From positions 186,001 to 250,000 of IMG/VR virus record IMGVR_UViG_3300042453_005404: a stretch of DNA of 64,000 bases. One strand, 5' to 3'. The position numbers and the translations under genes are program-made. This document shows, in pieces, positions 10,032 through 58,672 of the stretch (positions are counted from its first letter, which is position 1; the number at the start of each line of letters is the position of its first letter). A model generated the notes under the pieces. The model was given only the letters and a program-made list of their open reading frames with translations, did no database searches and was not told the origin of the DNA.

Positions 10032-10063
10032 AGAAGGAGCGGGTTTTTTAACCCGCTCCTTCT
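10032..10063. terminator. 14-bp stem hairpin between the capsid gene and the convergent ORF; probable bidirectional terminator
   Basis: AGAAGGAGCGGGTT-tttt-AACCCGCTCCTTCT. Confidence 0.85.
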
Positions 10064-15416: not shown

Positions 15417-16382
15417 ATGGAATACAAATACGAAGGTCATTCACTTAAATCCGGTATCTACAAAATCACAAACAAACTAAACGGAAGAATCTATATTGGT
15501 TCTGCTAAACGTTTCAAGGAACGGTGGCAATCTCACGTTTACTCTCTGAGAAATCAAAAACACAACAATAGTTTTCTTCAAGCGGATTTTAACAAATGCG
15601 GAGAAGAAGCATTTGTGTTCGAAGTATTGGAAGTTACAGAAGGCAAAACTAAAGAAGAACGTTTGTTGATTGAAGAAGTTTATATCGGGCAATATTACGA
15701 CAAAGGTAACAGCTGCTATAATCTGTGTAGCCGAGCGATATCTAGAGAAAACACAAAAAGCAAAAACCCAGAAGAAACAAAACGCAAGATATCGGCTGCC
15801 ACAAAAAAGATGTGGCAAGACCCAGAAAAAGCGGCTAGTATACGCAGCTCTATGAAAAGTGCGCTATCAGATCCAGAGACAGCCAAGCGTCATCAAGAGG
15901 GTCGCATTCGTTCGTGGGAAAACAATCAAGAACGTCGTGCCGCTGCTTCGCAACGTATGTCAGAACGTATGACAAACAATACGGAAGAAACAGAGAAAGT
16001 TGTAGAGATTCTAAAAGCATCACAACCTAAAGGCAGAGACACTTTTAGGAAACGAATGAAAGAAGATACAGAGCTTCGACAAACTTATGTTGATATTGCA
16101 AAAAAGAAAGCTGAAAATCTAAACGAGAGATACAAGAATGATGCTGAGTATAAAGCGATGATGGATAGAAAATCTATAGAGAACATCAAAGCGTATAACG
16201 AAAAACAAGCACAAAGCATACCAGTCAAAGCTCCTTTGGTATCACCAGATGGAATAGTTTATTCAGATGTTCGCAGTTTGAATGCATTTGCCAAAGAACA
16301 TGGTTTAGATTCAAGTTCTCTTTACAAGCTTTATTCTGGCAAGCTGAACGAAGTAAAAGGTTGGAAGCTATTTATAGAATAG
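15417..16382 (+). mobile_element. free-standing GIY-YIG homing endonuclease
   Basis: SGIYKITNKLNGRIYIGSAKRFKERW, FEVLE, E, YNL; helical linker; C-terminal NUMOD1/HTH-like module. Confidence 0.9.
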
Positions 16383-18445: not shown

Positions 18446-21400
18446 ATGCCAGAAACAGTTTTAAAAGCCCCAAATTACTTTGATCGTGAGTTTGACTTAA
18501 CTGAACGAACGATTCCTGTGGGTGGAACTCCTGCAACCGTTATTGGTGGAGCAGAAAGAGGCCCAGCATTCGTACCAGTAACACTTGGTAGCTACACAGA
18601 TTTTGTTAATAAGTTTGGTGATGTAAATCCAAAATTTGTTGGCTCATATGGAGCCAAAGCATTTTTGGATGCAAAAGGAAGTGAACTTGCATCTGTCAAC
18701 TATATACGTATTCTTGGATGTGGTGCAAACAATACCTCGGTAGATATATCAACAACAGAAGCAGAAGGCACTGTTACAAATGCTGGTATGCAAGTTGTTG
18801 GAAACGGTACCGTGTTCGCTTCTGGGGCTCTTCAAGGACGTGTACAGTTTCTTGTTGGCAAACACGCAGTACAAACAAACGAAGTGTTTGGTATGCCAGA
18901 CTTTACCAACAACTCCAGCTATAACGTAAGTGGTTTCGGTGTAGACAATGACACCGTAAATCTTGTTCGTGCAGTTTTGTTCACAACCCCGGATTCACGC
19001 TTTCTTGTGTTGAGTGGTGCAGTTGATGCTGGTGGTGTATTCAACCCAACAGCTTATTTGTCTGCATTAGGCACCAATGAAGCGGCTCAAGTTGGTACCG
19101 AAGGACCAATGTCAGGTTTGTTTAAACTAGTTTTATCATGCTCTGCTGGTTCAAGCTTTGCTTCTGATGATGGTGTGGCTGGCCTTAAGATCTTTTCAGC
19201 TTCGCTCGATCCAACTTCAACACAATATGTTGGCAAGCTTTTAAACACAAACCCAGAAGATTTTGCATCAAAAAAACACTTGCTGTATTTGGATTACGCA
19301 GTTGATGCCGAGGTAGCCGCATTGTCGGCAAGTAACTCGGTTGCAACAGTTGCAGTGTTGTCGGGTTCCAGTAACACAAACAGTTTCGGCCACACATTTG
19401 GTAGAGCATTTGGTTTTTTCAACACACGTTTTAAAACACCAAAAACTTCATACTTTATCTCGCAACCATTTGGTGGAATTGAATATGATTTGTTTTATGT
19501 TGAAAGTCGTGACGATGGTGCGTTTGCCAACAGCAAATACAAAATCAGCATATCAAATATTCAAGCTTCAACAAATCCATCAACCAAATATGGATCGTTC
19601 ACTTTGTCTGTGAGAGCATTCAATGACACAGACGCAGAACCTCAAATCCTTGAACAGTTCAACAATCTTTCTCTTGATCCAGCCAGTGCCAATTACGTGG
19701 CAAGAGCAATTGGTGACAAGCGTACTCAATTCAACTTCGATGCAGTCGATTCAGATGATCGTGGAGTTGTCGTTCTTGGCAAATATGGCAACCGCAGCAG
19801 ATTTATTCGTGTTGTTCCAAGCTCACAACTTGAGAACGAGGAAGTACCAGAACTAGCTCTTCCATTCGGTTTCCGTGGTCATCAAATGCTTCTTACGAAC
19901 GTAGCACTGACTGACCAAACTGGTTCAGTGCCACTGAACCAAACCCGTATTTCTGGTGTTTCTGGAAGCCTTGCAGGTGGAGGTTGTGATTTGTCTGGGT
20001 CGATTGTTCCACCGGTTCCATATCGCTTTACAATCACCCGCAACCCACTTGCAAACACAGGAACAACATTTGGGGCTCCCGGCACACAAACAGTCCTAGA
20101 TGGTCGTCTTTACTGGGGTGTTAAGTTCGAACGCAATAACAACAATGTGCTAAACACGAACGTAAATGCAGAAATCAATCCAATTGTTGCGAACTTTTCC
20201 AAGTTCGCAGGCATCGAAAAACAAGAAGTATTGACTACTGGGTCTGCAAGCGATCTTTTGAACGATAATAAGTTCTCACTTGCGAGAGTTGCATTGAACG
20301 TAACTACGATGACGGCTGTGGCTTCAACAGACGTGCCAACATTGATGAAGTCTGCTGCATATCTTCGCAATGCAGAAATCGACCCAACCACGTATGCTGC
20401 AACAAACTTTAGCAACCGTTTGACCTTTGCATCGCTACTAAACAGTGGCAGTGCTGTGCAATATAACAACTTCTCAAATTATGCTAAGTTCACAACCTTT
20501 ATGCAAGGTGGATGGGATGGAGTTAACATCTTTGACAAGCAAGCAGCTAGATTCACCGATCAATCAACTTCTACCGAATCAGGAGCGGGTGGTGTATATG
20601 GTCTTGCAAATGCAAGCTATGTTTCTCCCGGTGCCCCAACAGCAACAAACTATACTGGTGTAGACTCTGCAAACCAAAACGTTGTTGCATATCGCACAGC
20701 ACTAGACATTGCAACCAACTCAAGCATTGCCAACAACAATATTCTTGCAACACCGGGACAACGTGATCCGCTTGTAACCAACTATGCTCTAGAGAAAAAC
20801 ACAAGCTACGGTTTGAGCTTTTATCTTCTAGACATTCAACCATATGACAAAGATAGCGTTCGTATCTTTGATGGTGAAGCAGGCCGATATGTGTCTATTG
20901 GCAAAACAACAAATTTGTTTTTAAATCGTGCTTTGGATAACAATGCCGCTGCTGCTTATTTCCCAAACATTGTTGTTGATGACACTGTTAACACTCGCCG
21001 TGTAACTCTCCCAGCTTCTATTGCAGCAATCTCTGCACTAAGCTACAACGACCGTGTTAAGTTCCCATGGTTTGCTCCAGCAGGATTTGATCGTGGTTCT
21101 CTAAACTTTGTTCTTCAAACATCTATCAGAGTTAACCAAACAGATCGTAACACACTTTATGATGCAAACATTAACCCAATTGTGAAGTTTCCCGGTGCAA
21201 ACTATGTGTTCTTCTCACAAAACACTCTACAACAAGCTGAAAGTGCTTTGGAAAGCATTAACGTTAAACGTATGATACTGGAAGTCAAACGTCAGATTGT
21301 TGCTATCGGCAATCGTTTGATCTTTGAACAAAACACTCCAGCACTACGCACACGTTTTGTTAGCGAAGCATCTTTGGTTCTTGCAACAGTCAAACTTCAA

Positions 21401-21562
21401 CAAGGCATCGAACAGTTCGCAGTTATCTGTGATGAACGGAACAACAGCGCAGAAGACGTTAACAGCAACCGTATGAATGCACAAATCAGAGTGCTTCCAA
21501 CAAGAGCAATCGAATACGTTGTAATGGATTTCGTTGTGTTGCCATCGGGAGTTGCATTGTAG
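18446..21562 (+). CDS. gp18: tail sheath protein 1
   Basis: GGAERGPAFVPV, FGDV, PWFAPAGFDRG, LYDANINPIVKFP, INVKRMILEV, PTRAIEYV. Confidence 0.92.
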   Translation: MPETVLKAPNYFDREFDLTERTIPVGGTPATVIGGAERGPAFVPVTLGSYTDFVNKFGDVNPKFVGSYGAKAFLDAKGSELASVNYIRILGCGANNTSVDISTTEAEGTVTNAGMQVVGNGTVFASGALQGRVQFLVGKHAVQTNEVFGMPDFTNNSSYNVSGFGVDNDTVNLVRAVLFTTPDSRFLVLSGAVDAGGVFNPTAYLSALGTNEAAQVGTEGPMSGLFKLVLSCSAGSSFASDDGVAGLKIFSASLDPTSTQYVGKLLNTNPEDFASKKHLLYLDYAVDAEVAALSASNSVATVAVLSGSSNTNSFGHTFGRAFGFFNTRFKTPKTSYFISQPFGGIEYDLFYVESRDDGAFANSKYKISISNIQASTNPSTKYGSFTLSVRAFNDTDAEPQILEQFNNLSLDPASANYVARAIGDKRTQFNFDAVDSDDRGVVVLGKYGNRSRFIRVVPSSQLENEEVPELALPFGFRGHQMLLTNVALTDQTGSVPLNQTRISGVSGSLAGGGCDLSGSIVPPVPYRFTITRNPLANTGTTFGAPGTQTVLDGRLYWGVKFERNNNNVLNTNVNAEINPIVANFSKFAGIEKQEVLTTGSASDLLNDNKFSLARVALNVTTMTAVASTDVPTLMKSAAYLRNAEIDPTTYAATNFSNRLTFASLLNSGSAVQYNNFSNYAKFTTFMQGGWDGVNIFDKQAARFTDQSTSTESGAGGVYGLANASYVSPGAPTATNYTGVDSANQNVVAYRTALDIATNSSIANNNILATPGQRDPLVTNYALEKNTSYGLSFYLLDIQPYDKDSVRIFDGEAGRYVSIGKTTNLFLNRALDNNAAAAYFPNIVVDDTVNTRRVTLPASIAAISALSYNDRVKFPWFAPAGFDRGSLNFVLQTSIRVNQTDRNTLYDANINPIVKFPGANYVFFSQNTLQQAESALESINVKRMILEVKRQIVAIGNRLIFEQNTPALRTRFVSEASLVLATVKLQQGIEQFAVICDERNNSAEDVNSNRMNAQIRVLPTRAIEYVVMDFVVLPSGVAL

Positions 21563-21600
21563 TTTGTAAAACCTGTTATATTGCAGTTAATCATGAAAGA

Positions 21601-21634
21601 AAAAACTGCTGCTGAAAGGCAGCAGTTTTTTTTT
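21601..21634 (+). terminator. intrinsic terminator between the two sheath genes
   Basis: AAAAACTGCTGC-t-GAAA-g-GCAGCAGTTTTTTTTT. Confidence 0.85.
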
Positions 21635-21677: not shown

Positions 21678-24600
21678 ATGGCATTATTAAGCCCCGGCGT
21701 ACTAGCAAGAGAATTTGACATCAGTCAGCCAAGAACAACAACACCTTCTGGTGTTCCTGCTTTGGTTATTTCTACAACAACCAAAGGCCCAGCGTTTGTT
21801 CCAACCATGGTTACAACATTGTCACAATACGTATCAGTGTTTGGAGGAGTGAATGCTAACACACCATTAGGCTATCTTTCTGCAAGAGAATGGTTTGGGA
21901 ACACAGGCGTTCCTCTTATGCAGCTTAGAGTGCTTGGAGCTGGCCAAGGCTTGGCACGTAACGCAAATGGTACTGTGACTGACGCAGGCTTTATTGTTGG
22001 TGCTCAACAGCCAAGCGGATCTGGCGGGGCTCTGGGAGATAACGTGTTTGCAAACGCTACAGGTGTAACCGGGTCTGTATATATGCTTGGTTGCTTTATG
22101 AGCGAATCATTAGATTCAACATATCTTTCTGATGCAGGATTGCAAAACGATACAACGGCGGTACCAATCATTCGTGGTGTGTTGTTTGCTCCATCTGGTG
22201 TTGTTCTTCGTTTGTCTTCCGCAGCGCAGCCATCAAATGCACCCGCTTCAAACTTTGTTGCGACTGAAACTAGCTTTTCTGGTGGATTCACTGGGTCTGT
22301 TTCTTTAAGCGCCGGTCAACAAAACTTTGTAATGATTCTTAACGGCCATAAAGGAACAGATCTACGCTATCCAAATGCAATCACTGCCAGCTTTGACCCA
22401 CAAGCCGTCAACTATTTTCCAAGTGTATTCAATACCGATCCTCTTAAAACTCAAGAAGCTGGCCACTTGTTATATGCAAGCTTTGATGTTTATTCTGCAA
22501 TAGCAGTACCAACTGGTTCTGGTATAATCGAAGCAGCTAGCGGATCAGCTTTTGGAACCTTGCAAAATATTGCATTTATTGTTCCTTCTTCTGGTTCTGC
22601 TGCAACACACACATCGAATGTAGGTTCTAGCATTACACCAAACTTTGAAGGATTTGAAGATCGTTACGGTCACGCTTTTTCTCCTTGGGTGATATCGCAA
22701 GGATTTGGTGGAGTTCCACAAAATCTTTTCCGTTTTCATCATCTTTCGGCTGGTGAATCAGGAAACGGCGATGTAAAGATATCAATCACGAATATTCAAC
22801 CGGGAACGGCAACAAGTCCATATGGTGTGTTTACAGTGCTTGTCAAATCGATGACCGGATTGGATGGAGATGGAGCCTTGGAAACGTTTACCAATTGCTC
22901 GCTTGATCCAAGTTCACCAAACTATATCGCTCGTAAGATTGGTACCATTAACACGTTTTTTAACTTTGATACCGATGTTGCTTCACAAAAAGTAACAACA
23001 GATGGATCATATCCAAACAAATCAAATTATGTTCGTGTTGAAGTTGCTGATGCTGTTGATGCTGGTGAAATCGATCCTTCGGCTATGCCGTTTGGTTTCC
23101 GAGGCCCTCAACACCTTGTCACGCAAGGTTCGAGCTCTCTTTACAACATTAAACAAGGAGACTTGACAAATCCAGCTTTCCCATACTTCTCAAATCTTGC
23201 TGGTGGTTCTGGAGGCGGTGTGCCTCTATACAAAGCATCTCAACCACCAGTTCCAATGCGCCTAAACCTTAAGAAGCTTGCTGCTTCTTCTGGTGTTGAT
23301 ACAGGACTTTATTGGGGCGTGCAGTTCGAAAACGTAACAAGTCTTTCTGATCCAAACGGCAGCAATATATTCAATCCAAGCTTGCTTGGATATAGCAGAT
23401 ACTTTCCAAATCTTGTAGGATCAACAAACGTACAACCAGCGGTATTTGACAACAACGGTTCTGCTACAACTACCGCAAATGGAATCGTTGATTCCGATCT
23501 CTTTAACAATAACCTTTTCTCTCTAGAAAAGGTTAAGATTGTTACAGGTTCGGGTGATCGTCCAAACACCACCACCGCTGCTCTTCTAAGCTGGAGTTAC
23601 GTTCGTGCGGGTGGTATTGCCGCAGATGAAGCTACAAAAACAAGAGCGTTGTCTGTAAATGATCTTGTGGAAAACGCAGCGGTACAAACACTTGCCAAAT
23701 TTAGCTTTTATCTTGAACGTGGTTTTGACGGCGTAAGAATCTTTAACCCAGACACACGTTATCTTAAGAACGCTGCGGTGGCTCAAGAAATCACACAAAC
23801 AACTCGTGGTTTAACAAATGGTCCAACGGTTAGAAGCTATTTGAAGAGCATTGACATTATCTCAGATGTAAACGATGTTAACATTCAACTTCTTACAATA
23901 CCCGGCATACGTGATCGTTATGTCACCGACACAGCAATCGCCGCTGTAGAAAATGATCGATTTGATTGTTTCTATATCATGGACCCAGAACAATACGATG
24001 TAAACGGAACGTCAATCACAGGTTCATATGAAACTGTAAACGTTTCACAAACAGCAGCAGCGTTTGTTGCCCGTGGAGTTAACTCAAGTTTCGTTGCAAC
24101 TTACTTCCCAGATGTAAACATTGTTGGACCAACTGGTACAGTTTATGAAAAGGTACCACCATCTGTTGCAGTTCTTGGTGCGTTTGCTAAGAACGATACA
24201 GTTGGTCAACCATTCAATGCACCAGCAGGCTTTACAAGAGGCACGCTAACTAACGTAACAGATTTTGCTGTATCACTCAACCAAGCCAACTCTGATATCC
24301 TTTACGTGGCAAGATTGAATCTTCTTCTTTCCAAATCAGGCGTTGGTCCAGTTGTTTGGGGTCAAAAAACTCTACTCAACAAAGACAGCTTGCTTAACAG
24401 AGTTAACGTAAGAAGACTTTTGATCGCAATTCGTCGTGATGTGCGTGCGGTTGCAACACGCTTCTTGTTCGAACCAGCACAGTCTTCAACGCTTGCAGCA
24501 TTTAATGCAGCAGTTCAACCAATCATGGCACGTTACCAATCTGCTGGTGGTGTAGAAAAATACAAAGTTGTTATTGACACAACAACTACAACACAAGCCG

Positions 24601-24710
24601 ATTTGGACAACAAAACTCTGCGTGGAAAGATTTTCCTAATCCCAACCACATCTCTAGAGTTCTTCACAATCGACTTCTTTGTTACAAATCGTGACAGCTT
24701 CGTTGGTTAA
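21678..24710 (+). CDS. gp18: tail sheath protein 2
   Basis: LLSPGVLAREFD, TTKGPAFVPT, APAGFTRG, VVWGQKTL, RVNVRRLL, PTTSLEFF. Confidence 0.92.
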   Translation: MALLSPGVLAREFDISQPRTTTPSGVPALVISTTTKGPAFVPTMVTTLSQYVSVFGGVNANTPLGYLSAREWFGNTGVPLMQLRVLGAGQGLARNANGTVTDAGFIVGAQQPSGSGGALGDNVFANATGVTGSVYMLGCFMSESLDSTYLSDAGLQNDTTAVPIIRGVLFAPSGVVLRLSSAAQPSNAPASNFVATETSFSGGFTGSVSLSAGQQNFVMILNGHKGTDLRYPNAITASFDPQAVNYFPSVFNTDPLKTQEAGHLLYASFDVYSAIAVPTGSGIIEAASGSAFGTLQNIAFIVPSSGSAATHTSNVGSSITPNFEGFEDRYGHAFSPWVISQGFGGVPQNLFRFHHLSAGESGNGDVKISITNIQPGTATSPYGVFTVLVKSMTGLDGDGALETFTNCSLDPSSPNYIARKIGTINTFFNFDTDVASQKVTTDGSYPNKSNYVRVEVADAVDAGEIDPSAMPFGFRGPQHLVTQGSSSLYNIKQGDLTNPAFPYFSNLAGGSGGGVPLYKASQPPVPMRLNLKKLAASSGVDTGLYWGVQFENVTSLSDPNGSNIFNPSLLGYSRYFPNLVGSTNVQPAVFDNNGSATTTANGIVDSDLFNNNLFSLEKVKIVTGSGDRPNTTTAALLSWSYVRAGGIAADEATKTRALSVNDLVENAAVQTLAKFSFYLERGFDGVRIFNPDTRYLKNAAVAQEITQTTRGLTNGPTVRSYLKSIDIISDVNDVNIQLLTIPGIRDRYVTDTAIAAVENDRFDCFYIMDPEQYDVNGTSITGSYETVNVSQTAAAFVARGVNSSFVATYFPDVNIVGPTGTVYEKVPPSVAVLGAFAKNDTVGQPFNAPAGFTRGTLTNVTDFAVSLNQANSDILYVARLNLLLSKSGVGPVVWGQKTLLNKDSLLNRVNVRRLLIAIRRDVRAVATRFLFEPAQSSTLAAFNAAVQPIMARYQSAGGVEKYKVVIDTTTTTQADLDNKTLRGKIFLIPTTSLEFFTIDFFVTNRDSFVG

Positions 24711-39514: not shown

Positions 39515-39850
39515 ATGCCAAAAAGAAAAAAAGCAATTGAGACTAATTCTGAAGAGTCGAATATTATAGCCAGTTCTGAGGTTAACGTAAACGAGTTGTT
39601 TGTAAAATTGAAAGAATTCGAAAACAAAGCTTTGATAGATAAGTTAAAGATTTTAGAGCGCAAACTAGATTTGCTACAAAAAGCTTACGTGCTAGATCGA
39701 ACAATGCTAAAAGAAATCAAACAACACGTAAGCTACCTAAGCCTTGCACATGAAGAACTTTTAAATAATCTTTACAGTGAAGCTCCTTATCATAACGAGG
39801 ATACCCAAGTATCCAACACAACAGAAAAAAGTGAAAAAAAATGGAACTAG
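39515..39850 (+). CDS. hypothetical coiled-coil protein
   Basis: ORF track. Confidence 0.65.
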   Translation: MPKRKKAIETNSEESNIIASSEVNVNELFVKLKEFENKALIDKLKILERKLDLLQKAYVLDRTMLKEIKQHVSYLSLAHEELLNNLYSEAPYHNEDTQVSNTTEKSEKKWN

Positions 39851-40290
39851 CAATAAAACTTAAAACGTATTTTGCAAAATTGTGGTATTACGTAAAGCTT
39901 TATTGGAAAGAAATTGGCTTTGCTGTTGCATTTATATACTTGTTGTTTTTTGTCAAGCAAAAAACAAACTTGATTGAAGAGTTGCTTCAAGAAAGAGAAA
40001 AAGCACACAAAGAGCATAAAGAAAATATTGACAAGCTTAACCAACAAATACAAAACGAAATAGCAACACGAAGAAAAATTGAATCAGACTTTCGAATATT
40101 GATTGATCGTATAAACAAACAACACGCTGATGAAATCAAAAGAATTGCTTTGGTGCGAGAAGAAGAAATAAAAGAACTCATTCGGCGGCATCATAACAAT
40201 CCAACAATAATGGCACAAACAATAAACGATTTGTTTGGTATACCAGTTATGACTGTTGCACCTGATAGACAAACATGGGAACCTCAATAA
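39841..40290 (+). CDS. N-terminal TM + coiled-coil protein, i-spanin-like
   Basis: IGFAVAFIYLLFFV followed by a long charged heptad region; lies in the lysis cluster. Confidence 0.5.
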   Translation: MELAIKLKTYFAKLWYYVKLYWKEIGFAVAFIYLLFFVKQKTNLIEELLQEREKAHKEHKENIDKLNQQIQNEIATRRKIESDFRILIDRINKQHADEIKRIALVREEEIKELIRRHHNNPTIMAQTINDLFGIPVMTVAPDRQTWEPQ

Positions 40291-40883
40291 TGAAAACCAA
40301 GTTAATATCTGGCTTACTTGTTGCTTTAATAGCTTGCAAAAAACCTGCAATCAACATACGCTCACAGCCAACTGTTTCAGAGCTAACAAACATTAACATG
40401 TCTGTGTATAACGTTCAACGCTCGCCCGAACCAACTGCGTTGTCTGTTAGATCTATTCTTGGTAATGAAACAGCAAGAAACATGGGAGCACAATCAATCT
40501 ACATCTATAATGCAAACACACCCAACCCAGTTAGACCTTATGTTCTAGGGCCATGGAACGGATTGTGTATCAACGAATCGTCTGTTAATCACATTGCTGC
40601 TTCATTTACTCAAGTTGTTCGAAGCGTACAAAATGATGAATTCTTGAGACTGCAAACTCTTAGCGGTCATGCTCAACGAGATATTGCATTGCTGCAATCT
40701 GATTTTCGTTCAGTTAGAAATGGTTATATCGCACAAATAAACGAGCGTGATATATCGCTGAGAGAATCTCAGCGAACTATCGATACCTTAAGACGTAACA
40801 ACGTATGGACAAGTGTTGGAGTAGGAGTTGGTGGGATTCTTTTAGGACTTGGTATTTCTGGTATCTTCCTACTTACAAGATAG
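40290..40883 (+). CDS. lipoprotein with a C-terminal TM, spanin-like (start 40290)
   Basis: MKTKLISGLLVALIAC lipobox; C-terminal VGVGVGGILLGLGISGIFLL. Confidence 0.55.
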   Translation: MKTKLISGLLVALIACKKPAINIRSQPTVSELTNINMSVYNVQRSPEPTALSVRSILGNETARNMGAQSIYIYNANTPNPVRPYVLGPWNGLCINESSVNHIAASFTQVVRSVQNDEFLRLQTLSGHAQRDIALLQSDFRSVRNGYIAQINERDISLRESQRTIDTLRRNNVWTSVGVGVGGILLGLGISGIFLLTR

Positions 40884-40895
40884 GAGAATACATAT

Positions 40896-41126
40896 ATGTC
40901 TTTGTTATTAAAAAACAGCGATGGCAAACCTAGTTTAAGCTACACCATGGTATATACTTCTTTTGTTGTGTCTTTGATTTGGTTTGCATTGTCGGTATTC
41001 AAGATTCCTCATGTTAAAGATTTCGACGTTACCACGGTAACTGGGTTCTTAACTCCACTCATGGCTCTGTACTTTGGTCGTCGTTGGAATGAAAAAACCA
41101 ACTCAAGCGAAGAGCCAACATCGTAA
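40896..41126 (+). CDS. small 2-TM protein, holin-like
   Basis: Two hydrophobic helices, basic C-terminus GRRW; between the spanin-like genes and the endolysin. Confidence 0.55.
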   Translation: MSLLLKNSDGKPSLSYTMVYTSFVVSLIWFALSVFKIPHVKDFDVTTVTGFLTPLMALYFGRRWNEKTNSSEEPTS

Positions 41127-41205
41127 ACTATCTAAAAACAAAGGGGTTTTGAAAAATCGAAACCTATTTATATTCAGATGCGTTAATATTTGCATCTGAA
41201 AGGAA

Positions 41206-41505
41206 TTGATCATGCTAACAGGTAAAGAGTATCTGGATAGTATTCAAAGTGCTATTCAAGAAGAAATCGATACCGAGTTACAACGTTTGCAATATTTTCT
41301 CAAAGCTAATGCTCGTATTCACAACACACGATTTCCATTTTTGTTTCCTGTGAGAAGCTGTCGTTTGGAAGTAATCGAAGCGTTGGCCAATCATCTTACG
41401 GAATCTGGCTGGAATGTAGAAAAAGGTAAAGAATACTTGCAGATTATGCCTGTTTCAACAAAAACGCCTACCGCTCCTGCGCCTCCAATGTTTCCTCGCA
41501 AGTAA
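41206..41505 (+). CDS. hypothetical protein
   Basis: ORF track; AAGGA RBS; CTATTTAT at 41164. Confidence 0.65.
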   Translation: MIMLTGKEYLDSIQSAIQEEIDTELQRLQYFLKANARIHNTRFPFLFPVRSCRLEVIEALANHLTESGWNVEKGKEYLQIMPVSTKTPTAPAPPMFPRK

Positions 41506-41541
41506 ATCAAATCAGCTTCTTACTTATAAGTCGGAGGTTTT

Positions 41542-41709
41542 ATGAACAAGTTTTTAAAAGATACTGAAGGTCTTTCAACAGTTGAATATGTGATCATTCT
41601 TATGTTGATTGCCGTTGTTGGCATTGTGGCTTGGAGAACGTTTGGTAACACTGTTGTAAGCAAAGTAAATGCTGGCAACAGTCAAATAAGCGGTCTTGGT
41701 GGAACCTAA
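41542..41709 (+). CDS. flp: Flp/Fap (type IVc, Tad) prepilin, 55 aa, absent from the ORF track
   Basis: MNKFLKDTEG|LSTVEYVIILMLIAVVGIVAWRTFGNTVVSKVNAGNSQISGLGGT; Gly cleavage site, E+5, Y+6, hydrophobic helix; GGAGG RBS. Confidence 0.85.
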   Translation: MNKFLKDTEGLSTVEYVIILMLIAVVGIVAWRTFGNTVVSKVNAGNSQISGLGGT

Positions 41710-41774
41710 TCATTTTTTTCTCAGGCAATGTATATTTATTCACAAACCTAAAGAAAAGGTAGGAGGATTTAAAT

Positions 41775-42242
41775 ATGTCAGTTTCAACAACAATCGACTC
41801 AACACTAGGCGTAGTTTCAACAGTAGATCCAGCTGGCGCTTCGAGCCCCGGTGCAGTAAATATTAACACCGGAGGAACAGTAACTGTTGCTGGTTTGCAA
41901 GCCCCAGTTATTTCTCTTACAACAGCAGCAACACTTTCAGCAGCACAAGCTGGTGTATTCACCTTTGGTACAGGTGGTGCTCCCGTAACATATGTGATGC
42001 CACTTGCTTCAAGCTGCCCCGGCGCAGTATTTACATTCCGTTCAGTAACAGCACAAGCCAATGCCCTTACTTGCTCACAAGAAGCGGCTGGTACAAAAGC
42101 TTTCACTGACGGAACATCAGCAGGTCAAGGCTCAAAAGTTGCTGTTGCTAACGTTATTGGAAGCTCTGTGTCACTTCTTTCCGATGGTAAGAACTTCCTA
42201 GTAATCGGCAACAGCGGTTCCCTAACTTTCTCCGGTACCTGA
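41775..42242 (+). CDS. probable virion structural/decoration protein
   Basis: Ala/Gly/Thr-rich beta-type sequence; AGGAGG RBS; ATATTTAT at 41732. Confidence 0.6.
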   Translation: MSVSTTIDSTLGVVSTVDPAGASSPGAVNINTGGTVTVAGLQAPVISLTTAATLSAAQAGVFTFGTGGAPVTYVMPLASSCPGAVFTFRSVTAQANALTCSQEAAGTKAFTDGTSAGQGSKVAVANVIGSSVSLLSDGKNFLVIGNSGSLTFSGT

Positions 42243-42270
42243 TTCTTAGCGTTTAGCTAAATCAAAACAA

Positions 42271-42300
42271 AGCCTCCTGCTAGTTATCTAGCAGGAGGTT
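42271..42300 (+). promoter_or_regulatory. hairpin sequestering the endolysin RBS, with the late motif across the loop
   Basis: CCTCCTGCTAG-TTAT-CTAGCAGGAGG (11-bp perfect stem); CTAGTTAT at 42280; ATG at 42306. Confidence 0.8.
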
Positions 42301-42305
42301 TTCTT

Positions 42306-43121
42306 ATGTCTATAATCCTAAATGAAGTTAAACTTGAAATACCAAATGTTAAAACAACAAGTTGGTTAGATGAAGAAGCAGCAGCTAAAAAGATCAAGCA
42401 AGTAACTGATAAAACAGTAAGATCGACGTGGATACGCTCGATTGTGTGTCACACTGTACATGGCAAGCTTGGCAGTCTTTTGCCGGGAGTAGGTCCAGAA
42501 GGTGATGCGGCAGAAAGATATGCACAATATCAAACCAACACAAAACGTAGCGTTAGCTGGGATTTTACTTGTGATTTGGATGGAAGTTGGATAATCCAAA
42601 ACGATCCATTGAAATTTTATACATGGCAAGCATCAAGTGTTAACGGTTACACATGCGGTTTTGAATTAGTTCAGTTAAACAATGGAGATTTATACGAGGG
42701 ACAGATAGCCAAGGCTGTCGAGTTTATTGATTTTCTAACAGCCAAACTTGGCATACAACGTCAAATCCCATGGGATATGAAAAACAACTGTCCTCCAAAG
42801 GGTATCGTTAGTCGTATTGCTGGATCTAATAATGGCAGAGACGTTATTGGTGTTTATTGTCACTATCATCAAACTACAAATCGTGGGCAAGGTGATCCCG
42901 GTCCATATCTTCAACAAGCTTTAAAGGCCGCTGGATATGAGACTTATGCATTTGATGGAGATGACGATAAAGCGGTCTGGAAGGTCCGTCAGAAGGCTTT
43001 AGGTTTTGCTGATAAAGATTGTGATGGAGTTCCCGGTCCTGCCACTGTAAGGGCTTTAAAAGCGTCTGGCAAGGCACATGGTATTTGGGTTAAACGTCCT
43101 ATCGATGATTTAATCAAGTGA
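42306..43121 (+). CDS. endolysin, N-acetylmuramoyl-L-alanine amidase with a C-terminal peptidoglycan-binding motif
   Basis: SIVCHTVHG, SVSWDFTCDLDG, NGYTCGFELV, YCHYH...GDPG, DGVPGPATVRAL. Confidence 0.82.
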   Translation: MSIILNEVKLEIPNVKTTSWLDEEAAAKKIKQVTDKTVRSTWIRSIVCHTVHGKLGSLLPGVGPEGDAAERYAQYQTNTKRSVSWDFTCDLDGSWIIQNDPLKFYTWQASSVNGYTCGFELVQLNNGDLYEGQIAKAVEFIDFLTAKLGIQRQIPWDMKNNCPPKGIVSRIAGSNNGRDVIGVYCHYHQTTNRGQGDPGPYLQQALKAAGYETYAFDGDDDKAVWKVRQKALGFADKDCDGVPGPATVRALKASGKAHGIWVKRPIDDLIK

Positions 43122-44178
43122 TTGGTTCGTAGCCACCTTGAGCGAGCCAACCAAGATCAAGGTTATCTGGAGTATATACTTCGGTACCATCTTCCAAAGG
43201 TTCATCTGATGGTACCATGCTAACGATTGTTACGTCGTTTGAGTTTGTAGGTTCAGCGTTTTCTTTTTGAAGATACGCTCGTCTTGCTGGGGAAGCTTCC
43301 ATATATGCATCACTTAGTCTTCTAGCTCCAGCCGGAGTATCCAAAGTGTACGGCGAATAATCTTTTGGTATTGGAGTGGTTACGATTAATCTTCCTTGAC
43401 AGCGTATACGAAGATAAAGATAAGTTCCGCTTCCTCCGGGTGTTGATCTCATCTCAATGATGAACTTGTTTTTCGAAGCAAGGCTAGACAACCTTGGAAC
43501 TCCTATTGCAGCTAAGTTAGCTGGGTCATGGCCAAGAATATACAACCCACGGTGATCGTTTTCTTTACCACCTATTTGTGCATAATACGTAGCTTTTTGA
43601 CTATAAAGAGTTGTCATGAACTTTGAGTGAGCTTGCACGTTATAGTTAAACAACAAACCATTTGCTTGTGCAGCAGCCCATGCAAGACGAGTGCATTGTA
43701 ATCCTTCACCAGCAAGGTTGTAAGCTTCACCTTCTTTGGTTTCTAAAAACGTTTTTCCGTTAATTTCATGTCGCCCAGCTTTAAAGTTTTTTAAAAACCT
43801 ACGCAATCTTTTAAGGGCACCACCAGTGCCCAAAGCTTGTTCAAGTACTTCTTTCATTTCATCATGCACTTTAATCATGGCTTGACTTGTTCCCAAATCA
43901 GAAAGAAAACGTATATCTCTTGGATTGCTTATATCCCAACTGCTGCCACCAAGTTGAGCTTTAAAATCTTTTTTGATTTCGAGTTTAAATGGGCCGACTG
44001 TATTGCCTTTGTTATCTTGTAGTGTAAAGGTTGCGTCCTCACTATAACGGTTTGAGCCAGCTCCTGTAGCCGTTCGCAATGTCATACCGGCTGCAAAAAG
44101 AGAATTGTTAACCAGTGCTTCATATCCAAAACCTTCTGTTTCAAATTCTTCAAAAAGTAGCTCTTCTAGAAATATCAT
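43114..44178 (-). CDS. putative PD-(D/E)XK nuclease
   Basis: GYEALV...SEDATF...KLEIKKDFKAQLG; N-terminal IFLEELLFE tag. Confidence 0.55.
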   Translation of the reverse strand: MIFLEELLFEEFETEGFGYEALVNNSLFAAGMTLRTATGAGSNRYSEDATFTLQDNKGNTVGPFKLEIKKDFKAQLGGSSWDISNPRDIRFLSDLGTSQAMIKVHDEMKEVLEQALGTGGALKRLRRFLKNFKAGRHEINGKTFLETKEGEAYNLAGEGLQCTRLAWAAAQANGLLFNYNVQAHSKFMTTLYSQKATYYAQIGGKENDHRGLYILGHDPANLAAIGVPRLSSLASKNKFIIEMRSTPGGSGTYLYLRIRCQGRLIVTTPIPKDYSPYTLDTPAGARRLSDAYMEASPARRAYLQKENAEPTNSNDVTIVSMVPSDEPLEDGTEVYTPDNLDLGWLAQGGYEPIT

Positions 44179-44250
44179 GAGTGATTAAGCTCCATTGACA
44201 AAATACTATACATTATACATAGTAACTTGTAATCAACAGGAGTTGCGTAT

Positions 44251-52466: not shown

Positions 52467-52553
52467 ATGGAATATAGGTTTGAAGGAAACGCTAATAAAA
52501 GTGGTGGTCCCCCTCTTCTACAAACAACACGCTCTTCACTAAACCCAGCTTGA
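52467..52553 (+). pseudogene. 28-codon remnant of the GIY-YIG family
   Basis: MEYRFEGNANKSG vs MEYKYEGHSLKSG (15417); leader CTATATA...GAGAGGTA..GTTT(T)ATGGAATA conserved at DNA level. Confidence 0.7.
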
Positions 52554-52575
52554 TCTATACTTAACTGTATAGATC

Positions 52576-53286
52576 ATGGCTGGTTTTAACCCTAACAGAA
52601 AAAAGAAAACTTATTCACTTAATCGTTCGCAGCCATCAAAGGTTATTGCAACGATTGTTGATGGAAAAGTTGAATACTTTGACGAAACGCTGGTCACGGT
52701 TGATAACCCATACTATCAACTTCAAACAGCAACAAGTCAGGGTTTACCTCCACCTCCTCCACCTCCCCCCCCAGCCGAATACGATGAAGATGTTATAGAG
52801 TTCGATTGGACAGATACCGAGGTAGCAACCTTTAACATAACGTTTTCACAAAATCCTTATCTTACACTGGAAATACTTCCAGCAGAAGGATTTGAGAACA
52901 TAGCATTTTTTGCTAACAACTTATCAACAACAGGATTTATTGCACACGTTTCTGCTCCGTTTAGTGGACAGATTGTTTATCGTGCTATTGTGTCTCCAGT
53001 ATTCCCTGTTGTTATTGAACGTGTTGTTGTTAGTAGTTCATTTTACTACACAGCTTCTGCTGGAAAGATACCAGAAAGTTCGAACTCAGAGTTTGTTGCA
53101 ACATACAATCAACTGTTTCCAGCAACATATCCAACAAACTTATTCTTTACACCAATAGATGATAACAACAATGGAGATGCTGGTGTTGCGATTGTTGCAA
53201 CTGGTTCGTTTGGTTTAACAAGTACAGAAGTAACCTATTCTGCACCAGTATATAACTCTATACACTATCTTGCAGTGAAACCTTGA
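52576..53286 (+). CDS. probable structural protein
   Basis: ORF track; poly-Pro linker; ATACTTAA motif at 52556. Confidence 0.65.
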   Translation: MAGFNPNRKKKTYSLNRSQPSKVIATIVDGKVEYFDETLVTVDNPYYQLQTATSQGLPPPPPPPPPAEYDEDVIEFDWTDTEVATFNITFSQNPYLTLEILPAEGFENIAFFANNLSTTGFIAHVSAPFSGQIVYRAIVSPVFPVVIERVVVSSSFYYTASAGKIPESSNSEFVATYNQLFPATYPTNLFFTPIDDNNNGDAGVAIVATGSFGLTSTEVTYSAPVYNSIHYLAVKP

Positions 53287-56551: not shown

Positions 56552-56560
56552 AACCATTTT

Positions 56561-56604
56561 ATTAGCCCCTCTGTTATACTTAAGGTAGAAACAGAGGGGC
56601 TAAT
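56561..56604 (+). promoter_or_regulatory. 15-bp perfect hairpin covering the RBS and start of 56603, with the late motif in the loop
   Basis: ATTAGCCCCTCTGTT-atacttaaggtaga-AACAGAGGGGCTAAT(G). Confidence 0.8.
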
Positions 56605-58672
56605 GGCAACAGAACGTAAACCTTTATATATCACCATTCCAAGCGTACATCAGTTTGAGCTTCCAACAACAGCAAGTGCTGGTGGTGTAGATCTTAATAC
56701 AGGCAGAAACCTTTACTACAACACCAGTTCACTTGCATGGGTTCCTCAAGAAACTTTTTCTGGTAGTAGCGCAACTCTTGGAGATATTACAGGCTCTAAT
56801 CTTCGTCTAACTGGTAATCCCGGCACTATAGTAAACGAAGTTGGACCACTCACAATTAGTAGCTCTGTGGGCATCACAACAACTGGTTCTATCATCTTTT
56901 CTGGTTCACGTTCAGACAGTGGAACAGAACAAAGCTCTGTTCTTGTTGATGGTGATATATTTGTTTCTGGTGGCATCGGAACAAACGATTATATCCAGCT
57001 AAAGCCCGTTAGCCTTCTTCGTATTCCTACAAATACAACATCTTCTTACATTTATACGTCTGGAAGTACGAACGACCTTTATTTTACTCAATACAGTGGT
57101 TCGTTTACCAACACAACACGTTTGCGTTGGTTGGAAGGAGCTTTGACAACAGGTCTTTTAAATGGTGGACTTCTTACAACAACAAATGGAACAACAACAT
57201 TCAATATAAGTGCTGGAGATGGTATCGTAGTACAGTTTAATGCTTCTACTACGTCTGATCCATATCCAACCGTAAGAAAAGTTGCATGGCCGTTATCTAG
57301 CAGCATACCATTGTATTACAGCGGTTCAGCACAAATCACATATGTTGGAATTGATATCAATGGTCAAGTAGTTCAGCGCACATCACCTTTTGCTGGAACA
57401 GATTATCAAGATTATATTTCTATTGGCAGGGTTTTGCATCAAGCAAATGCAGTTACTAATGGTACGATTACTTCTCCAGTTGTAGCTTATGGTCAAAATA
57501 CGTGGACAGGAGATTTCCAACGTGCATTTGGTCCTTTAAAGATTTCGGGTCATACACTTGCTGCTTCTGGTTCTGGAACAACGCTAGCCATAACAAAGAG
57601 TGCAGGTGACTCTTTTGTAGAGGGGAAAAACTATGATAGCGATCCAGACAGCCCAAACCTTGTTCTTGGTTCTATTGAAGGTGCTCAGTTAACTTCTAAG
57701 ATATTTCGTATATACAGCAATACTTCTGGCACTCCAACAATCTTAACCAACGGTGGTTCTGGTTTTACAGATATTGATCCCGGTAATTATAATCCCGGTA
57801 ACTTAGGGGTAACAAGTTCTGTTGGTTCTGGTAAATTTACGATTCAAAGAGTTTATTGGTTTCCAAATTCTGTAACCAAAGCTTTTTTTGTTTATTATGG
57901 AACAACAGAATATGCAACTATAGACGTAGCGCAGTCTAGCATTCCAACAGATTTCTTTGTTGAAGGCCAAAATACTGCTGGTGCAGCTATTCTTGTTGCA
58001 TATTTGATTGTTGCTTATAACGCAACAAACTTAAACAACACTGCACAAGCTCGTATTGTTCAAGCTGGATTATTTCGAAACAATGGTATCGGCGGCGGGG
58101 GTGGAGGAGCAACAACTCCCGGTGGTAATGACACATATGTTCAGTTCAACAATAGCGGAACATTTGGTGGTGATGCAGACTTTACTTTTAGCACGGCCAC
58201 AAATACTCTTGCTGTAAGCAACATACAAGTTTCTGGGATTGTTGGGGCGAGCGGAAGTATGACGTTAGGGGATGCGCCATCTGATTTGATTGCTGTTTCT
58301 GGTAACTTAGTATTTGGTGAATATGGAGAACGTATAACCTTGGCTACTGGGATTGTTGGGGGAACAACCAACTTTGATTTTTCTGGGGCAACAATATTCT
58401 ATGTTTCGGGAGCAACAAGTGATGGAACTTGGAACATCACGAACGTTCCAACTACAGATAAGATTGCTAGCAAAATCAAATTTGTGATCGATCAAGCCAG
58501 CACACCTTATAGTGCTTCTGCATATCAAATCAACAGTTCTCCTGTTGCGGTAAAATGGCTAAATACAACAATTCCAACAGGCACAGCAAACCATACTGAT
58601 GTTATTCAGCTAGATGCATATCGTAGTGGTTCCGGTTGGAATATATTAGGTTCTTTAACAACTTTTAGTTAA
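56603..58672 (+). CDS. fibre/baseplate-like virion protein
   Basis: Gly/Ser/Thr-rich; GNDTYVQFNNSGTFGG motif also in 55073 (GSNTQVQFNDDGAFG); C-terminal VKWLNTTIPTGTANHTDVI. Confidence 0.65.
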   Translation: MATERKPLYITIPSVHQFELPTTASAGGVDLNTGRNLYYNTSSLAWVPQETFSGSSATLGDITGSNLRLTGNPGTIVNEVGPLTISSSVGITTTGSIIFSGSRSDSGTEQSSVLVDGDIFVSGGIGTNDYIQLKPVSLLRIPTNTTSSYIYTSGSTNDLYFTQYSGSFTNTTRLRWLEGALTTGLLNGGLLTTTNGTTTFNISAGDGIVVQFNASTTSDPYPTVRKVAWPLSSSIPLYYSGSAQITYVGIDINGQVVQRTSPFAGTDYQDYISIGRVLHQANAVTNGTITSPVVAYGQNTWTGDFQRAFGPLKISGHTLAASGSGTTLAITKSAGDSFVEGKNYDSDPDSPNLVLGSIEGAQLTSKIFRIYSNTSGTPTILTNGGSGFTDIDPGNYNPGNLGVTSSVGSGKFTIQRVYWFPNSVTKAFFVYYGTTEYATIDVAQSSIPTDFFVEGQNTAGAAILVAYLIVAYNATNLNNTAQARIVQAGLFRNNGIGGGGGGATTPGGNDTYVQFNNSGTFGGDADFTFSTATNTLAVSNIQVSGIVGASGSMTLGDAPSDLIAVSGNLVFGEYGERITLATGIVGGTTNFDFSGATIFYVSGATSDGTWNITNVPTTDKIASKIKFVIDQASTPYSASAYQINSSPVAVKWLNTTIPTGTANHTDVIQLDAYRSGSGWNILGSLTTFS

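What the first reader, a model, noticed from the sequence alone, without database searches (positions are those of the whole stretch)
42271..42308. Endolysin RBS locked in an 11-bp hairpin with the late-promoter motif across the loop
Seen: CCTCCTGCTAG-TTAT-CTAGCAGGAGG, with GGAGG 7 nt before the ATG and CTAGTTAT spanning the loop. Established: T4 gene e and I-TevI are silenced on long read-through transcripts by RBS-occluding hairpins, and late transcripts starting inside the hairpin lack the 5' arm. Inference: the same timing switch prevents premature lysis, and it independently supports TA(C/T/G)TTA as the late promoter.
Basis: partly seen in the sequence, partly recalled or inferred. Interest (0 to 1): 0.6.

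Follow-up and report, generated by a model that had tools for sequence, protein, structure and literature searches.

The report
Endolysin start site locked in hairpin
Just upstream of a lake phage's cell-wall-cutting enzyme gene, one 34-base RNA hairpin looks like a transcription stop signal, hides the ribosome landing site and carries the gene's likely own promoter in its loop, a compact version of a trick known from phage T4.

Summary
CCTCCTGCTAG (42273-42283), loop TTAT, and CTAGCAGGAGG (42288-42298) form a perfect 11-bp stem, 15 bp with the flanking AAAG/UUUU. It folds at -24.7 kcal/mol (z -7). GGAGG lies 7 nt before the ATG at 42306 of an amidase-type endolysin.

The helix is conserved with covariation in 14 of 16 distinct relatives. 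The loop motif TAGTTA is invariant in those 14, while its pairing partners drift through G-U wobbles.

The motif class [A/C]TA[C/G/T]TTA(T) is real:
- It is 5-8 fold enriched upstream of genes and biased to the sense orientation.
- It precedes all nine recognised structural genes in the window and none of six replication-type genes checked.
- In 11 genes, this one included, it sits exactly 6 nt before the Shine-Dalgarno sequence.

So the T4 gene e analogy holds in anatomy.
- The hairpin is also a textbook intrinsic terminator (A-tract, GC stem, UUUUCUU) placed 31 nt after a structural-looking gene.
- The upstream genes carry the same motif, so "early versus late timing" is not supported. Insulation of endolysin expression from upstream late transcripts fits better.

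No transcript ends could be observed. I rate it a new member of a known kind, of moderate interest.

The parts
41775..42242 (+). Upstream co-oriented gene (155 aa). It is probably a virion fibre or decoration-type beta-sandwich protein. Its stop codon lies 31 nt before the hairpin's left arm.
   Evidence: ORF listed, with a strong SD and its own TATATTTAT motif. Atlas structure look-alikes are phage fibre and cement domains (leads only). Its C-terminus (…GT*) is conserved upstream of the hairpin in relatives.
42269..42272 (+). AAAG: the outer 5' extension of the helix (part of the A-tract AAAACAAAG, 42264-42272). It pairs with UUUU at 42299-42302.
   Evidence: The outer pairs co-vary in relatives (AU, UA, GC, GU).
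42273..42283 (+). 5' arm CCTCCTGCTAG. It contains the anti-Shine-Dalgarno CCTCC.
   Evidence: CTCCT is invariant in relatives.
42280..42287 (+). CTAGTTAT: an instance of the genome-wide upstream motif [A/C]TA[C/G/T]TTA(T), the presumed late promoter. It spans the end of the 5' arm and the whole loop.
   Evidence: Motif enrichment and orientation are. TAGTTA is invariant in 14 relatives while its partners vary. The 6-nt gap to the SD is the modal class.
42292..42294 (+). Predicted transcription start (A42293). This is inferred, not observed.
   Evidence: A is enriched 11-12 nt after the motif start across 66 sites. The geometry follows T4 late promoters (PMC3014915).
42288..42298 (+). 3' arm CTAGCAGGAGG. 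It contains the Shine-Dalgarno (A)GGAGG at 42293-42298.
   Evidence: All 12 nucleotides of the SD window are paired in the MFE. This is the strongest fully SD-covering hairpin in the genome.
42299..42305 (+). UUUUCUU: the SD-to-AUG spacer, which is also a terminator-type U-tract.
   Evidence: The tail score is 4.11. It is kept (2.8 or more) in 10 of 14 relatives and lost (0.17) in 3.
42306..43121 (+). Endolysin gene (271 aa): an Amidase_2-type N-acetylmuramoyl-L-alanine amidase plus a PG_binding_1-like C-terminus. It has no signal or SAR segment.
   Evidence: (weak profile hit to XlyA amidase).

Best explanation
The 34-nt element at 42269-42302 works as + strand RNA. It insulates endolysin expression from transcription arriving from upstream, and it carries the gene's own promoter.

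Step 1 (inferred). Transcripts coming from the upstream late structural-type genes fold the 11-15 bp GC-rich hairpin followed by UUUUCUU. Most of them terminate just before the AUG.

Step 2 (shown thermodynamically, inferred biologically). Any RNA that reads through keeps AGGAGG buried in a -24.7 kcal/mol helix. The upstream stop codon is 31 nt away, too far for ribosomes to open the helix, so such RNA is not translated.

Step 3 (inferred from motif statistics, conservation and T4 precedent). RNA polymerase directed by a phage late factor recognises CTAGTTAT in the loop and 5' arm and starts at about A42293. That mRNA begins with AGGAGGUUUUCUUAUG and lacks the 5' arm. It can therefore form neither the terminator nor the RBS lock, and it is translated.

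The result is that endolysin dosage is set by its own promoter alone. This is the T4 gene e logic, used here mainly to insulate expression level and operon rather than to separate early from late. A terminator is superimposed on it.
For: Structure:
- The hairpin folds at -24.7 kcal/mol, z -7.0, whereas RNA starting at 42293 is unstructured (-2.9, centroid 0).
- Perfect hairpins of 11 bp or more occur at 12 loci against 0.4 expected.

Conservation:
- 26 related loci give 16 distinct upstream sequences, and 14 keep the anti-SD / TAGTTA / SD arrangement.
- On alignment A2, 87% of cells are paired against 42-57% when the partners are slid.
- Six pairs show changes on both sides, and 0 of 500 shuffles reach the observed score.
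- In-helix substitutions are almost all G-U wobbles on the + strand. That points to an RNA helix on this strand.
- TAGTTA never changes while its partners do.

Motif:
- TATTTA, TAGTTA and TACTTA occur upstream of 39, 26 and 22 genes against 5.8, 4.0 and 2.8 expected.
- There are 88 sense against 34 antisense copies within 80 nt of gene starts.
- There is no -35 element, and A is enriched 11-12 nt after the motif start.
- The motif precedes the portal, capsid, both sheath and fibre genes. It is absent before the RNR, DnaB-like, RecA-like, PolIII-alpha, SbcCD-like and GroEL-like genes.
- A fixed 6-nt motif-to-SD gap occurs in 11 genes, including this one.

Terminator:
- This is the best terminator-like hit in 12 kb.
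- It has the same A-tract / stem / T-tract style as the hairpins after the capsid and sheath genes.
- Its tail score is 4.11.

Same design elsewhere:
- Window 56560-56605, before a tail-fibre gene: -28.9, z -7.8.
- Window 52545-52585: -23.1, z -8.8.
- Relative L059: A-tract, stem, CTATTTAT loop, stem, U-tract, ATG; -27.3, z -5.8.

T4 precedent: PMC3014915, and the T4 e leader folded.
Against: - No 5' or 3' RNA ends were seen. The only RNA-labelled runs are assembled contigs that do not cover the hairpin, or are probably DNA.
- The motif's promoter nature and its 'late' class rest on association only.
- The late sigma factor is seen only as a weak hit: phrog_234 at E 3e-4, no Pfam family, and BLAST to T4 gp55 not significant.
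- Upstream:RBS pairing is not more frequent at motif sites than at control genes, so this is not a general rule of the phage.
- Three relatives (L023, L024, L029) have no U-tract, and L008 has only a 6-bp stem. Termination is therefore not conserved throughout the clade.
- Two more distant relatives with a different upstream gene have the motif but no hairpin. The lock is therefore dispensable for this endolysin family.
Confidence: 0.55

Rival explanations
1. The hairpin is only the intrinsic terminator of the upstream 155-aa gene. Its 3' arm happens to use the endolysin SD because the 63-nt spacer is tight. The TAGTTA in the loop is not an active promoter, and the endolysin is made at a low level from read-through RNA when the helix breathes.
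For: - The terminator anatomy is canonical.
- It is the same style as the hairpins after the capsid and sheath genes.
- The hairpin co-occurs with the 155-aa upstream gene and is absent where that gene is replaced.
- Hairpins are not enriched genome-wide at motif sites.
Against: - Three relatives keep the helix, and even extend it over the AUG region, with no U-tract at all (tail score 0.17).
- TAGTTA is invariant in 14 relatives although the loop and its pairing partners change.
- The motif sits at the modal 6-nt distance from the SD, as in 10 other genes.
- A -24.7 kcal/mol lock on the SD would leave almost no translation from read-through RNA. This is an inference from established RBS-structure thermodynamics.
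Confidence: 0.2
2. This is the reader's version: a pure T4-e-type temporal switch. Early or middle read-through transcripts carry the locked RBS. Late transcripts start inside the hairpin, and the purpose is to prevent premature lysis. Termination plays no role.
For: - The anatomy matches T4 e.
- The helix and motif are conserved.
- The helix is retained without a U-tract in L023, L024 and L029.
Against: - All four genes immediately upstream carry the same motif, so incoming RNA is expected to be of the same temporal class.
- No sigma-70-like promoter stands out on the + strand between 36.5 and 42.3 kb. The scan found 25 hits against 31.5 expected.
- The endolysin has no export signal, so early synthesis would not by itself cause lysis.
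- A strong U-tract is present in 10 of 14 variants.
Confidence: 0.15
3. The motif is an RNA processing (endonuclease) site rather than a promoter. Cleavage in the loop would separate the upstream mRNA from the endolysin mRNA.
For: An intergenic, sense-oriented, AU-rich motif is also what a cleavage signal would look like. Here it is displayed single-stranded in a loop.
Against: - After a cut in the loop, the two arms would still form an 11-15 bp duplex, so the SD would stay locked.
- The motif also occurs in helices or 5' arms rather than loops (L007 and window 52545-52585).
- The phage has T4-type morphogenesis genes, and single-element promoters without a -35 are the T4-type late pattern.
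Confidence: 0.05
4. The palindrome works at the DNA level or on the other strand. It could be a protein-binding site or cruciform. It could also be a bidirectional terminator that stops antisense transcription coming from the sigma-70-like promoter at 44205-44233 through gene 43114-44178.
For: - In this phage the repeat is a perfect palindrome flanked by A- and T-tracts, and it is called as a terminator on the - strand too.
- It is the first terminator-like structure downstream of the convergent gene.
Against: In relatives the in-helix changes are G-U wobbles on the + strand, which become A·C mismatches in DNA and in - strand RNA. The majority state of one pair is U-G. The - strand tail (CTTTGTTTTG) is weaker.
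Confidence: 0.05

Closest known systems
Phage T4 gene e (lysozyme) leader: an RBS-sequestering hairpin with late promoters in its 5' strand (McPheeters et al. 1986, as reviewed in PMC3014915)
   Same: - An anti-SD arm, then the late-promoter element in the 5' arm and loop, then GGAGG in the 3' arm a few nt before the AUG of the lysis enzyme.
- Transcripts that start after the promoter lack the 5' arm.
- Compare (T4 e leader, -14.9 kcal/mol, z -3.8).
   Different: - The promoter word differs: CTAGTTAT, of the class [A/C]TA[C/G/T]TTA(T), against TATAAATA.
- The enzyme is not homologous: an Amidase_2 amidase against a GH24 lysozyme.
- The stem here is much stronger (-24.7) and is followed by a U-tract with an A-tract before it, which is terminator anatomy the T4 e leader lacks.
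- The upstream genes here appear to be late, not early.
- The phage is only distantly T4-like. Its capsid protein is 33-43% identical to the nearest cultured phages.
T4 I-TevI, soc and gene 49, and Aeh1 mobE: RBS-occluding hairpins relieved by internal late promoters (PMC3014915)
   Same: They use the same occlusion-and-bypass principle at several genes of one phage. This phage also has further cases: the tail-fibre gene at 56603 and the gene at 52576.
   Different: The GIY-YIG homing endonuclease of this phage (15417-16382) has only a weak, non-significant SD hairpin (z -1.0). No case here has experimental support.
Canonical Rho-independent (intrinsic) terminators
   Same: An 11-bp stem with 7 G-C pairs, a 4-nt loop, an immediate UUUUCUU and an upstream A-tract. 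It lies 31 nt after the stop of a co-oriented gene.
   Different: The 3' arm is the SD of the next gene and the loop carries a promoter-like word. The U-tract is lost in some relatives while the helix is kept.

Membership tests
T4 gene e-type translational lock (RBS-occluding hairpin bypassed by an internal late promoter) | The SD and/or AUG is paired in a stable helix on transcripts that include the upstream arm. | tested here: met
   In silico only. All of AGGAGG is paired, at -24.7 kcal/mol and z -7.0. The helix is conserved with covariation.
T4 gene e-type translational lock (RBS-occluding hairpin bypassed by an internal late promoter) | A late promoter lies within or next to the 5' arm, so that the start site falls 3' of that arm. 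| tested here: inconclusive
   The motif is at 42280-42287, and its position, statistics and invariance fit. Promoter activity and the start site were not observed.
T4 gene e-type translational lock (RBS-occluding hairpin bypassed by an internal late promoter) | The short transcript has an open translation initiation region. | tested here: met
   RNA from 42293 folds at -2.9 kcal/mol, with an unpaired centroid and z +1.2.
T4 gene e-type translational lock (RBS-occluding hairpin bypassed by an internal late promoter) | Longer transcripts of an earlier temporal class read into the gene. | tested here: not met
   By sequence only. The four upstream genes carry the same motif, and no sigma-70-like promoter stands out on this strand. 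True timing is not testable here.
T4 gene e-type translational lock (RBS-occluding hairpin bypassed by an internal late promoter) | The phage encodes a gp55-type late sigma factor. | tested here: inconclusive
   - There is a weak phrog_234 hit (E 2e-5 to 3e-4) to a 245-aa ORF at genome 67924-68661.
- That ORF has no Pfam family.
- BLAST to T4 gp55 is not significant.
- The record is only about 70% complete.
Intrinsic (Rho-independent) terminator | A GC-rich stem of 5-14 bp with a loop of 3-8 nt. | tested here: met
   11 bp, 7 G-C pairs, loop of 4 nt.
Intrinsic (Rho-independent) terminator | A U-rich tract immediately 3' of the stem. | tested here: met
   UUUUCUU, tail score 4.11. The eight other terminator-like hairpins in the genome score 1.5-6.1.
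Intrinsic (Rho-independent) terminator | It lies shortly downstream of a co-oriented gene. | tested here: met
   The stop codon is at 42240-42242 and the stem starts at 42273.
Intrinsic (Rho-independent) terminator | The U-tract is conserved together with the stem in relatives. | tested here: inconclusive
   10 of 14 variants score 2.8 or more. L007 scores 2.4, L008 1.6, and L023, L024 and L029 score 0.17.
Intrinsic (Rho-independent) terminator | RNA 3' ends fall in the U-tract. | not testable with these tools
   Only assembled contigs of RNA-labelled runs were available, and none informs on ends.

The most novel reading that the evidence does not exclude
In this clade of uncultured T4-like freshwater jumbo phages, the minimal late promoter is short enough to sit inside the loop of an intrinsic terminator whose 3' arm is the next gene's Shine-Dalgarno sequence. 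One roughly 34-nt 'stop, restart, unlock' module would then end the upstream transcript, silence any read-through, and launch a leader-minimal mRNA that begins at the SD. The same design upstream of a tail-fibre gene in a relative (L059), and the fixed 6-nt promoter-to-SD spacing in 11 genes, would make it a reusable way to give each late gene its own dosage.
Probability: 0.4. Interest if true: 0.55.

Novelty: new member of a known kind. Interest (0 to 1): 0.4.

Why it matters
If confirmed, the T4 gene e strategy is not a peculiarity of T-even phages. In that strategy the ribosome site is locked on incoming RNA and then bypassed from an internal late promoter. Here it would recur, probably by convergence, in a very distant lineage that uses a different promoter word and a non-homologous lysis enzyme.

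The locus also gives a precise, testable anchor for the unknown late-promoter consensus of this clade: a start at about 42293 and an invariant TAGTTA. In addition it offers a compact natural part that combines terminator, promoter and RBS lock, which is relevant to annotating huge-phage transcription units and to synthetic insulators.

The practical gain is moderate, because the mechanism is known and the host is uncultured.

Tried and rejected
1. A blastn search of 41500-43200 against cultured phages found no match. Relatives came only from IMG/VR and metagenome contigs.

2. RNA evidence was uninformative.
- One run search and one lay of 5,501 letters were made.
- The two 'RNA-Seq' runs that hold the region are probably DNA.
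- The two true metatranscriptomes have only short contigs at 41191-41499 and 43179-43444, with none over the hairpin.
- All are assembled contigs, so no starts or ends are visible.

3. I tested genome-wide whether motif sites pair with their RBS more than control genes do. They do not. At p<=0.05 the counts are 6 of 66 against 22 of 282. At E<=-16 they are 4 of 66 against 31 of 282. Only p<=0.01 is marginal, at 4 against 4 (Fisher 0.045). I therefore dropped the idea that this is a general rule of the phage.

4. The hairpin before the holin-like gene (40850-40900) is not significant (z -0.2), and neither is the one before the GIY-YIG endonuclease gene (z -1.0). Neither is counted as a case.

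5. T4 gp55 and gp45 gave no tblastn hit, and phrog_12791 gave none. Only a weak phrog_234 hit remains.

6. The enriched word TTGGTTGG looked like a second promoter. It proved to be the conserved C-terminal coding block of a tandem paralog family.

7. Rfam gave no family in 41000-43500. PDB sequence searches gave nothing for the single protein and only weak XlyA hits for the profile.

8. A literature search for the motif words found nothing relevant.

9. The loci without a hairpin (L026, L027 and L028) might have served as a natural 'no read-through' control. They have a different co-oriented upstream gene, so they are not a clean control.

10. The costly large protein searches, structure prediction and complex prediction were not used. 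The claim does not depend on them. No alternative genetic code was used.

Full report
CONTEXT

The window is bases 186001-250000 of a 260,466-bp IMG/VR virus record that is estimated about 70% complete. It carries T4-type morphogenesis genes:
- gp20-like portal, 295-2319
- gp23-like capsid protein, 8053-10005
- two ~1000-aa sheath paralogs, 18446-21562 and 21678-24710

Its replication genes are of another type: PolIII-alpha, DnaB-like, RecA-like, RNR and SbcCD-like. The capsid protein is only 33-43% identical to the nearest deposited phages, which are Microcystis phage Mel-JY01, uncultured huge phages, Flavobacterium 'immuto' phages and Rhodothermus RM378. Near-identical DNA occurs in lake, reservoir and other freshwater metagenomes from many studies.

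THE OBSERVATION

The sequence is exactly as described:
- CCTCCTGCTAG at 42273-42283, loop TTAT at 42284-42287, CTAGCAGGAGG at 42288-42298
- TTTTCTT at 42299-42305
- ATG at 42306
- CTAGTTAT at 42280-42287

With AAAG (42269-42272) pairing to UUUU, the helix reaches 15 pairs. It folds at -24.7 kcal/mol against -7.3 +/- 2.5 for shuffles (z -7.0).

Perfect hairpins of 11 bp or more occur at 12 loci in the genome, against 0.4 expected from a first-order Markov model. Among all genes, this is the strongest local hairpin that covers the entire Shine-Dalgarno window.

The ORF at 42306-43121 is an Amidase_2-type endolysin with a PG_binding_1-like tail. Its N-terminus is conserved from this ATG in eight homologues. 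It has no hydrophobic N-terminal segment.

IS THE MOTIF REAL?

I made crude gene calls in the whole record: 348 genes covering 93% of the sequence. On these calls the motif holds up:
- TATTTA, TAGTTA and TACTTA are among the most enriched hexamers in the 80 nt upstream of starts. They occur before 39, 26 and 22 genes against 5.8, 4.0 and 2.8 expected.
- All 9 genomic copies of CTATTTAT lie upstream of genes.
- 88 copies are sense-oriented within 80 nt of a start, against 34 antisense.
- The consensus is [A/C]TA[C/G/T]TTA(T). There is no -35-like element, and A is enriched 11-12 nt after the motif start. This is the architecture of a T4-type late promoter (PMC3014915), although the word differs from TATAAATA.
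- The motif precedes the portal, capsid, both sheath, fibre and other structural genes.
- It is nearly absent from a 110-130 kb block of small genes.
- It is absent before six replication or nucleotide-metabolism genes.
- In 11 of 48 motif genes that have a recognisable SD, the SD starts exactly 6 nt after the hexamer. The endolysin is one of them. Such mRNAs would begin practically at the SD.

A late sigma factor is seen only as a weak hit.

COMPARATIVE EVIDENCE AT THIS LOCUS

The endolysin retrieved 7 viral and 19 metagenome loci at 71-100% protein identity. These give 16 distinct upstream sequences.

Fourteen of them keep the arrangement anti-SD (CTCCT), TAGTTA, SD (AGGAG). On alignment A2 with the 15-pair structure:
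- 87% of cells pair, against 42-57% when the partners are slid.
- Six pairs change on both sides.
- No shuffle out of 500 reaches the observed covariation.

The row-by-row view adds three points:
- The left-arm bases that belong to the motif never change.
- Their right-arm partners change A to G and C to T, giving U-G and G-U pairs. U-G is even the majority state of one pair.
- The L007 group has a true compensatory C-G to A-U change and a re-drawn inner stem.

These wobbles exist only in + strand RNA. This argues against a DNA cruciform or a conserved - strand function. It also shows that the motif bases are under a constraint beyond pairing.

The element is the best terminator-like hit on both strands in 36-48 kb. 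It has the same A-tract / GC stem / T-tract build as the hairpins after the capsid gene (window 10032-10063) and the first sheath gene (21600-21631), and as several others.

Its U-tract score is 4.11, within or above the range of those hairpins (1.5-6.1). It starts 31 nt after the stop codon of a co-oriented 155-aa gene. That gene has a strong SD and its own motif, and its predicted fold resembles phage fibre and cement beta-sandwich domains (a lead only).

Among the 14 variants, the U-tract scores break down as follows:
- 10 keep a good U-tract.
- L007 is borderline and L008 is weak.
- L023, L024 and L029 have none. Their spacer is CACAGTATT. They keep the helix and replace the outer A:U pairs by ATAATA:TATTAT, which reaches toward the AUG.

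Sequestration of the initiation region is therefore the feature common to the clade. Termination is an added property in most members, this phage included.

Two more distant loci (L026/L027 and L028) have a different upstream gene, the motif, and no hairpin.

TIMING VERSUS INSULATION

The genes at 40896, 41212, 41542 and 41775 each have the same motif. No sigma-70-like promoter stands out on this strand. The endolysin also has no export signal.

The sequence therefore does not indicate that early transcripts read into the gene, and early enzyme would not lyse the cell by itself. The better-supported purpose is to uncouple endolysin dosage from abundant upstream late transcripts.

OTHER INSTANCES

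Genome-wide, motif sites do not pair with their RBS more often than control genes do. Individual cases are nevertheless strong:
- 56560-56605 before a tail-fibre gene: ATACTTAA in the loop, with GAGGGG and part of the AUG in the 3' arm; -28.9, z -7.8.
- 52545-52585: the AUG in the 3' arm and the motif in the 5' arm and loop; -23.1, z -8.8. This one is partly conserved in relatives.
- The tail-fibre locus of relative L059: A-tract, 12-bp stem, CTATTTAT loop, stem, U-tract, ATG; -27.3, z -5.8.

The hairpins before the holin-like gene and before the GIY-YIG endonuclease gene are not significant.

COMPARISON WITH T4

The T4 gene e leader, fetched and folded here, has the same layout at -14.9 kcal/mol and no U-tract. 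Its behaviour is reviewed in PMC3014915: about 100-fold repression on long transcripts, with late transcripts lacking the 5' strand.

The present element is a new member of that kind. It sits in a distant lineage, with a different promoter word and a non-homologous enzyme, and it has terminator anatomy superimposed.

LIMITS

No RNA ends were observable. Promoter activity, termination and translational repression are inferred. Rfam has no family here.

Noticed in passing
window 39841-41126: A candidate lysis cassette lies upstream of the endolysin. It comprises 39841-40290 (an N-terminal TM segment), 40275/40290-40883 (lipobox LIAC near the N-terminus plus a C-terminal TM segment, a unimolecular-spanin-like layout) and 40896-41126 (76 aa, hydrophobic, holin-like). 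This rests on crude hydropathy and a lipobox scan only. PHROGs gave nothing useful.
   Followed up: partly
window 41542-41709: A 55-aa ORF resembles Flp/Fap pilin (Pfam E 1.6e-4, below the cutoff) and has one strong TM segment. It has its own motif and a GGAGG SD at the 6-nt spacing.
   Followed up: no
window 56560-56605 and 52545-52585: Two further highly significant hairpins place the upstream motif in the loop or 5' arm and the SD or AUG in the 3' arm. One precedes a tail-fibre gene and the other a 236-aa gene. The 52576 gene would have a leader of only about 6-7 nt if transcription starts after the motif.
   Followed up: partly
genome-wide (11 genes, e.g. window 27999, 37652, 40896, 41542, 42306): There is a fixed 6-nt gap between TA[C/G/T]TTA and the Shine-Dalgarno sequence. 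This implies mRNAs that begin essentially at the SD.
   Followed up: partly
window 15417-16382: A GIY-YIG homing endonuclease gene is inserted among structural genes. Its SD GGAGAGG can pair with an upstream CCTCTCC, but the fold is not significant.
   Followed up: partly
window 44195-44233 and 43114-43121: Back-to-back sigma-70-like promoters (TTGACA-17-CATAGT on +, ATTACA-17-TATAGT on -) lie in the divergent spacer. The - strand gene 43114-44178 converges on the endolysin gene and overlaps its 3' end by 8 nt with no terminator between them. Antisense transcription across the endolysin gene is therefore conceivable.
   Followed up: no
genome 110-131 kb (outside the window): A tandem family of about 100-aa paralogous genes shares a conserved C-terminal coding block (…ACATTGGTTGGAT…TTCGAACTTGTAAAGGAATAA). 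It first looked like a second promoter motif.
   Followed up: partly
window 18446-21562 and 21678-24710: Two adjacent tail-sheath paralogs of about 1000 aa are separated by a strong terminator-like hairpin (21600-31) and a TCTATTTAT motif.
   Followed up: no
genome 67924-68661 (L011:1429-2166): A 245-aa ORF has a weak match to the T4 gp55 late-sigma family (phrog_234, E about 3e-4). It is the only candidate late factor in the record.
   Followed up: partly
genome 104.5-105.1 kb (outside the window): A 12-bp inverted repeat TCCTTTTTGTAG…CTACAAAAAGGA lies between divergent genes. Each arm supplies the AAAGGA SD of one gene, with CTATAGTTAT between the arms.
   Followed up: no
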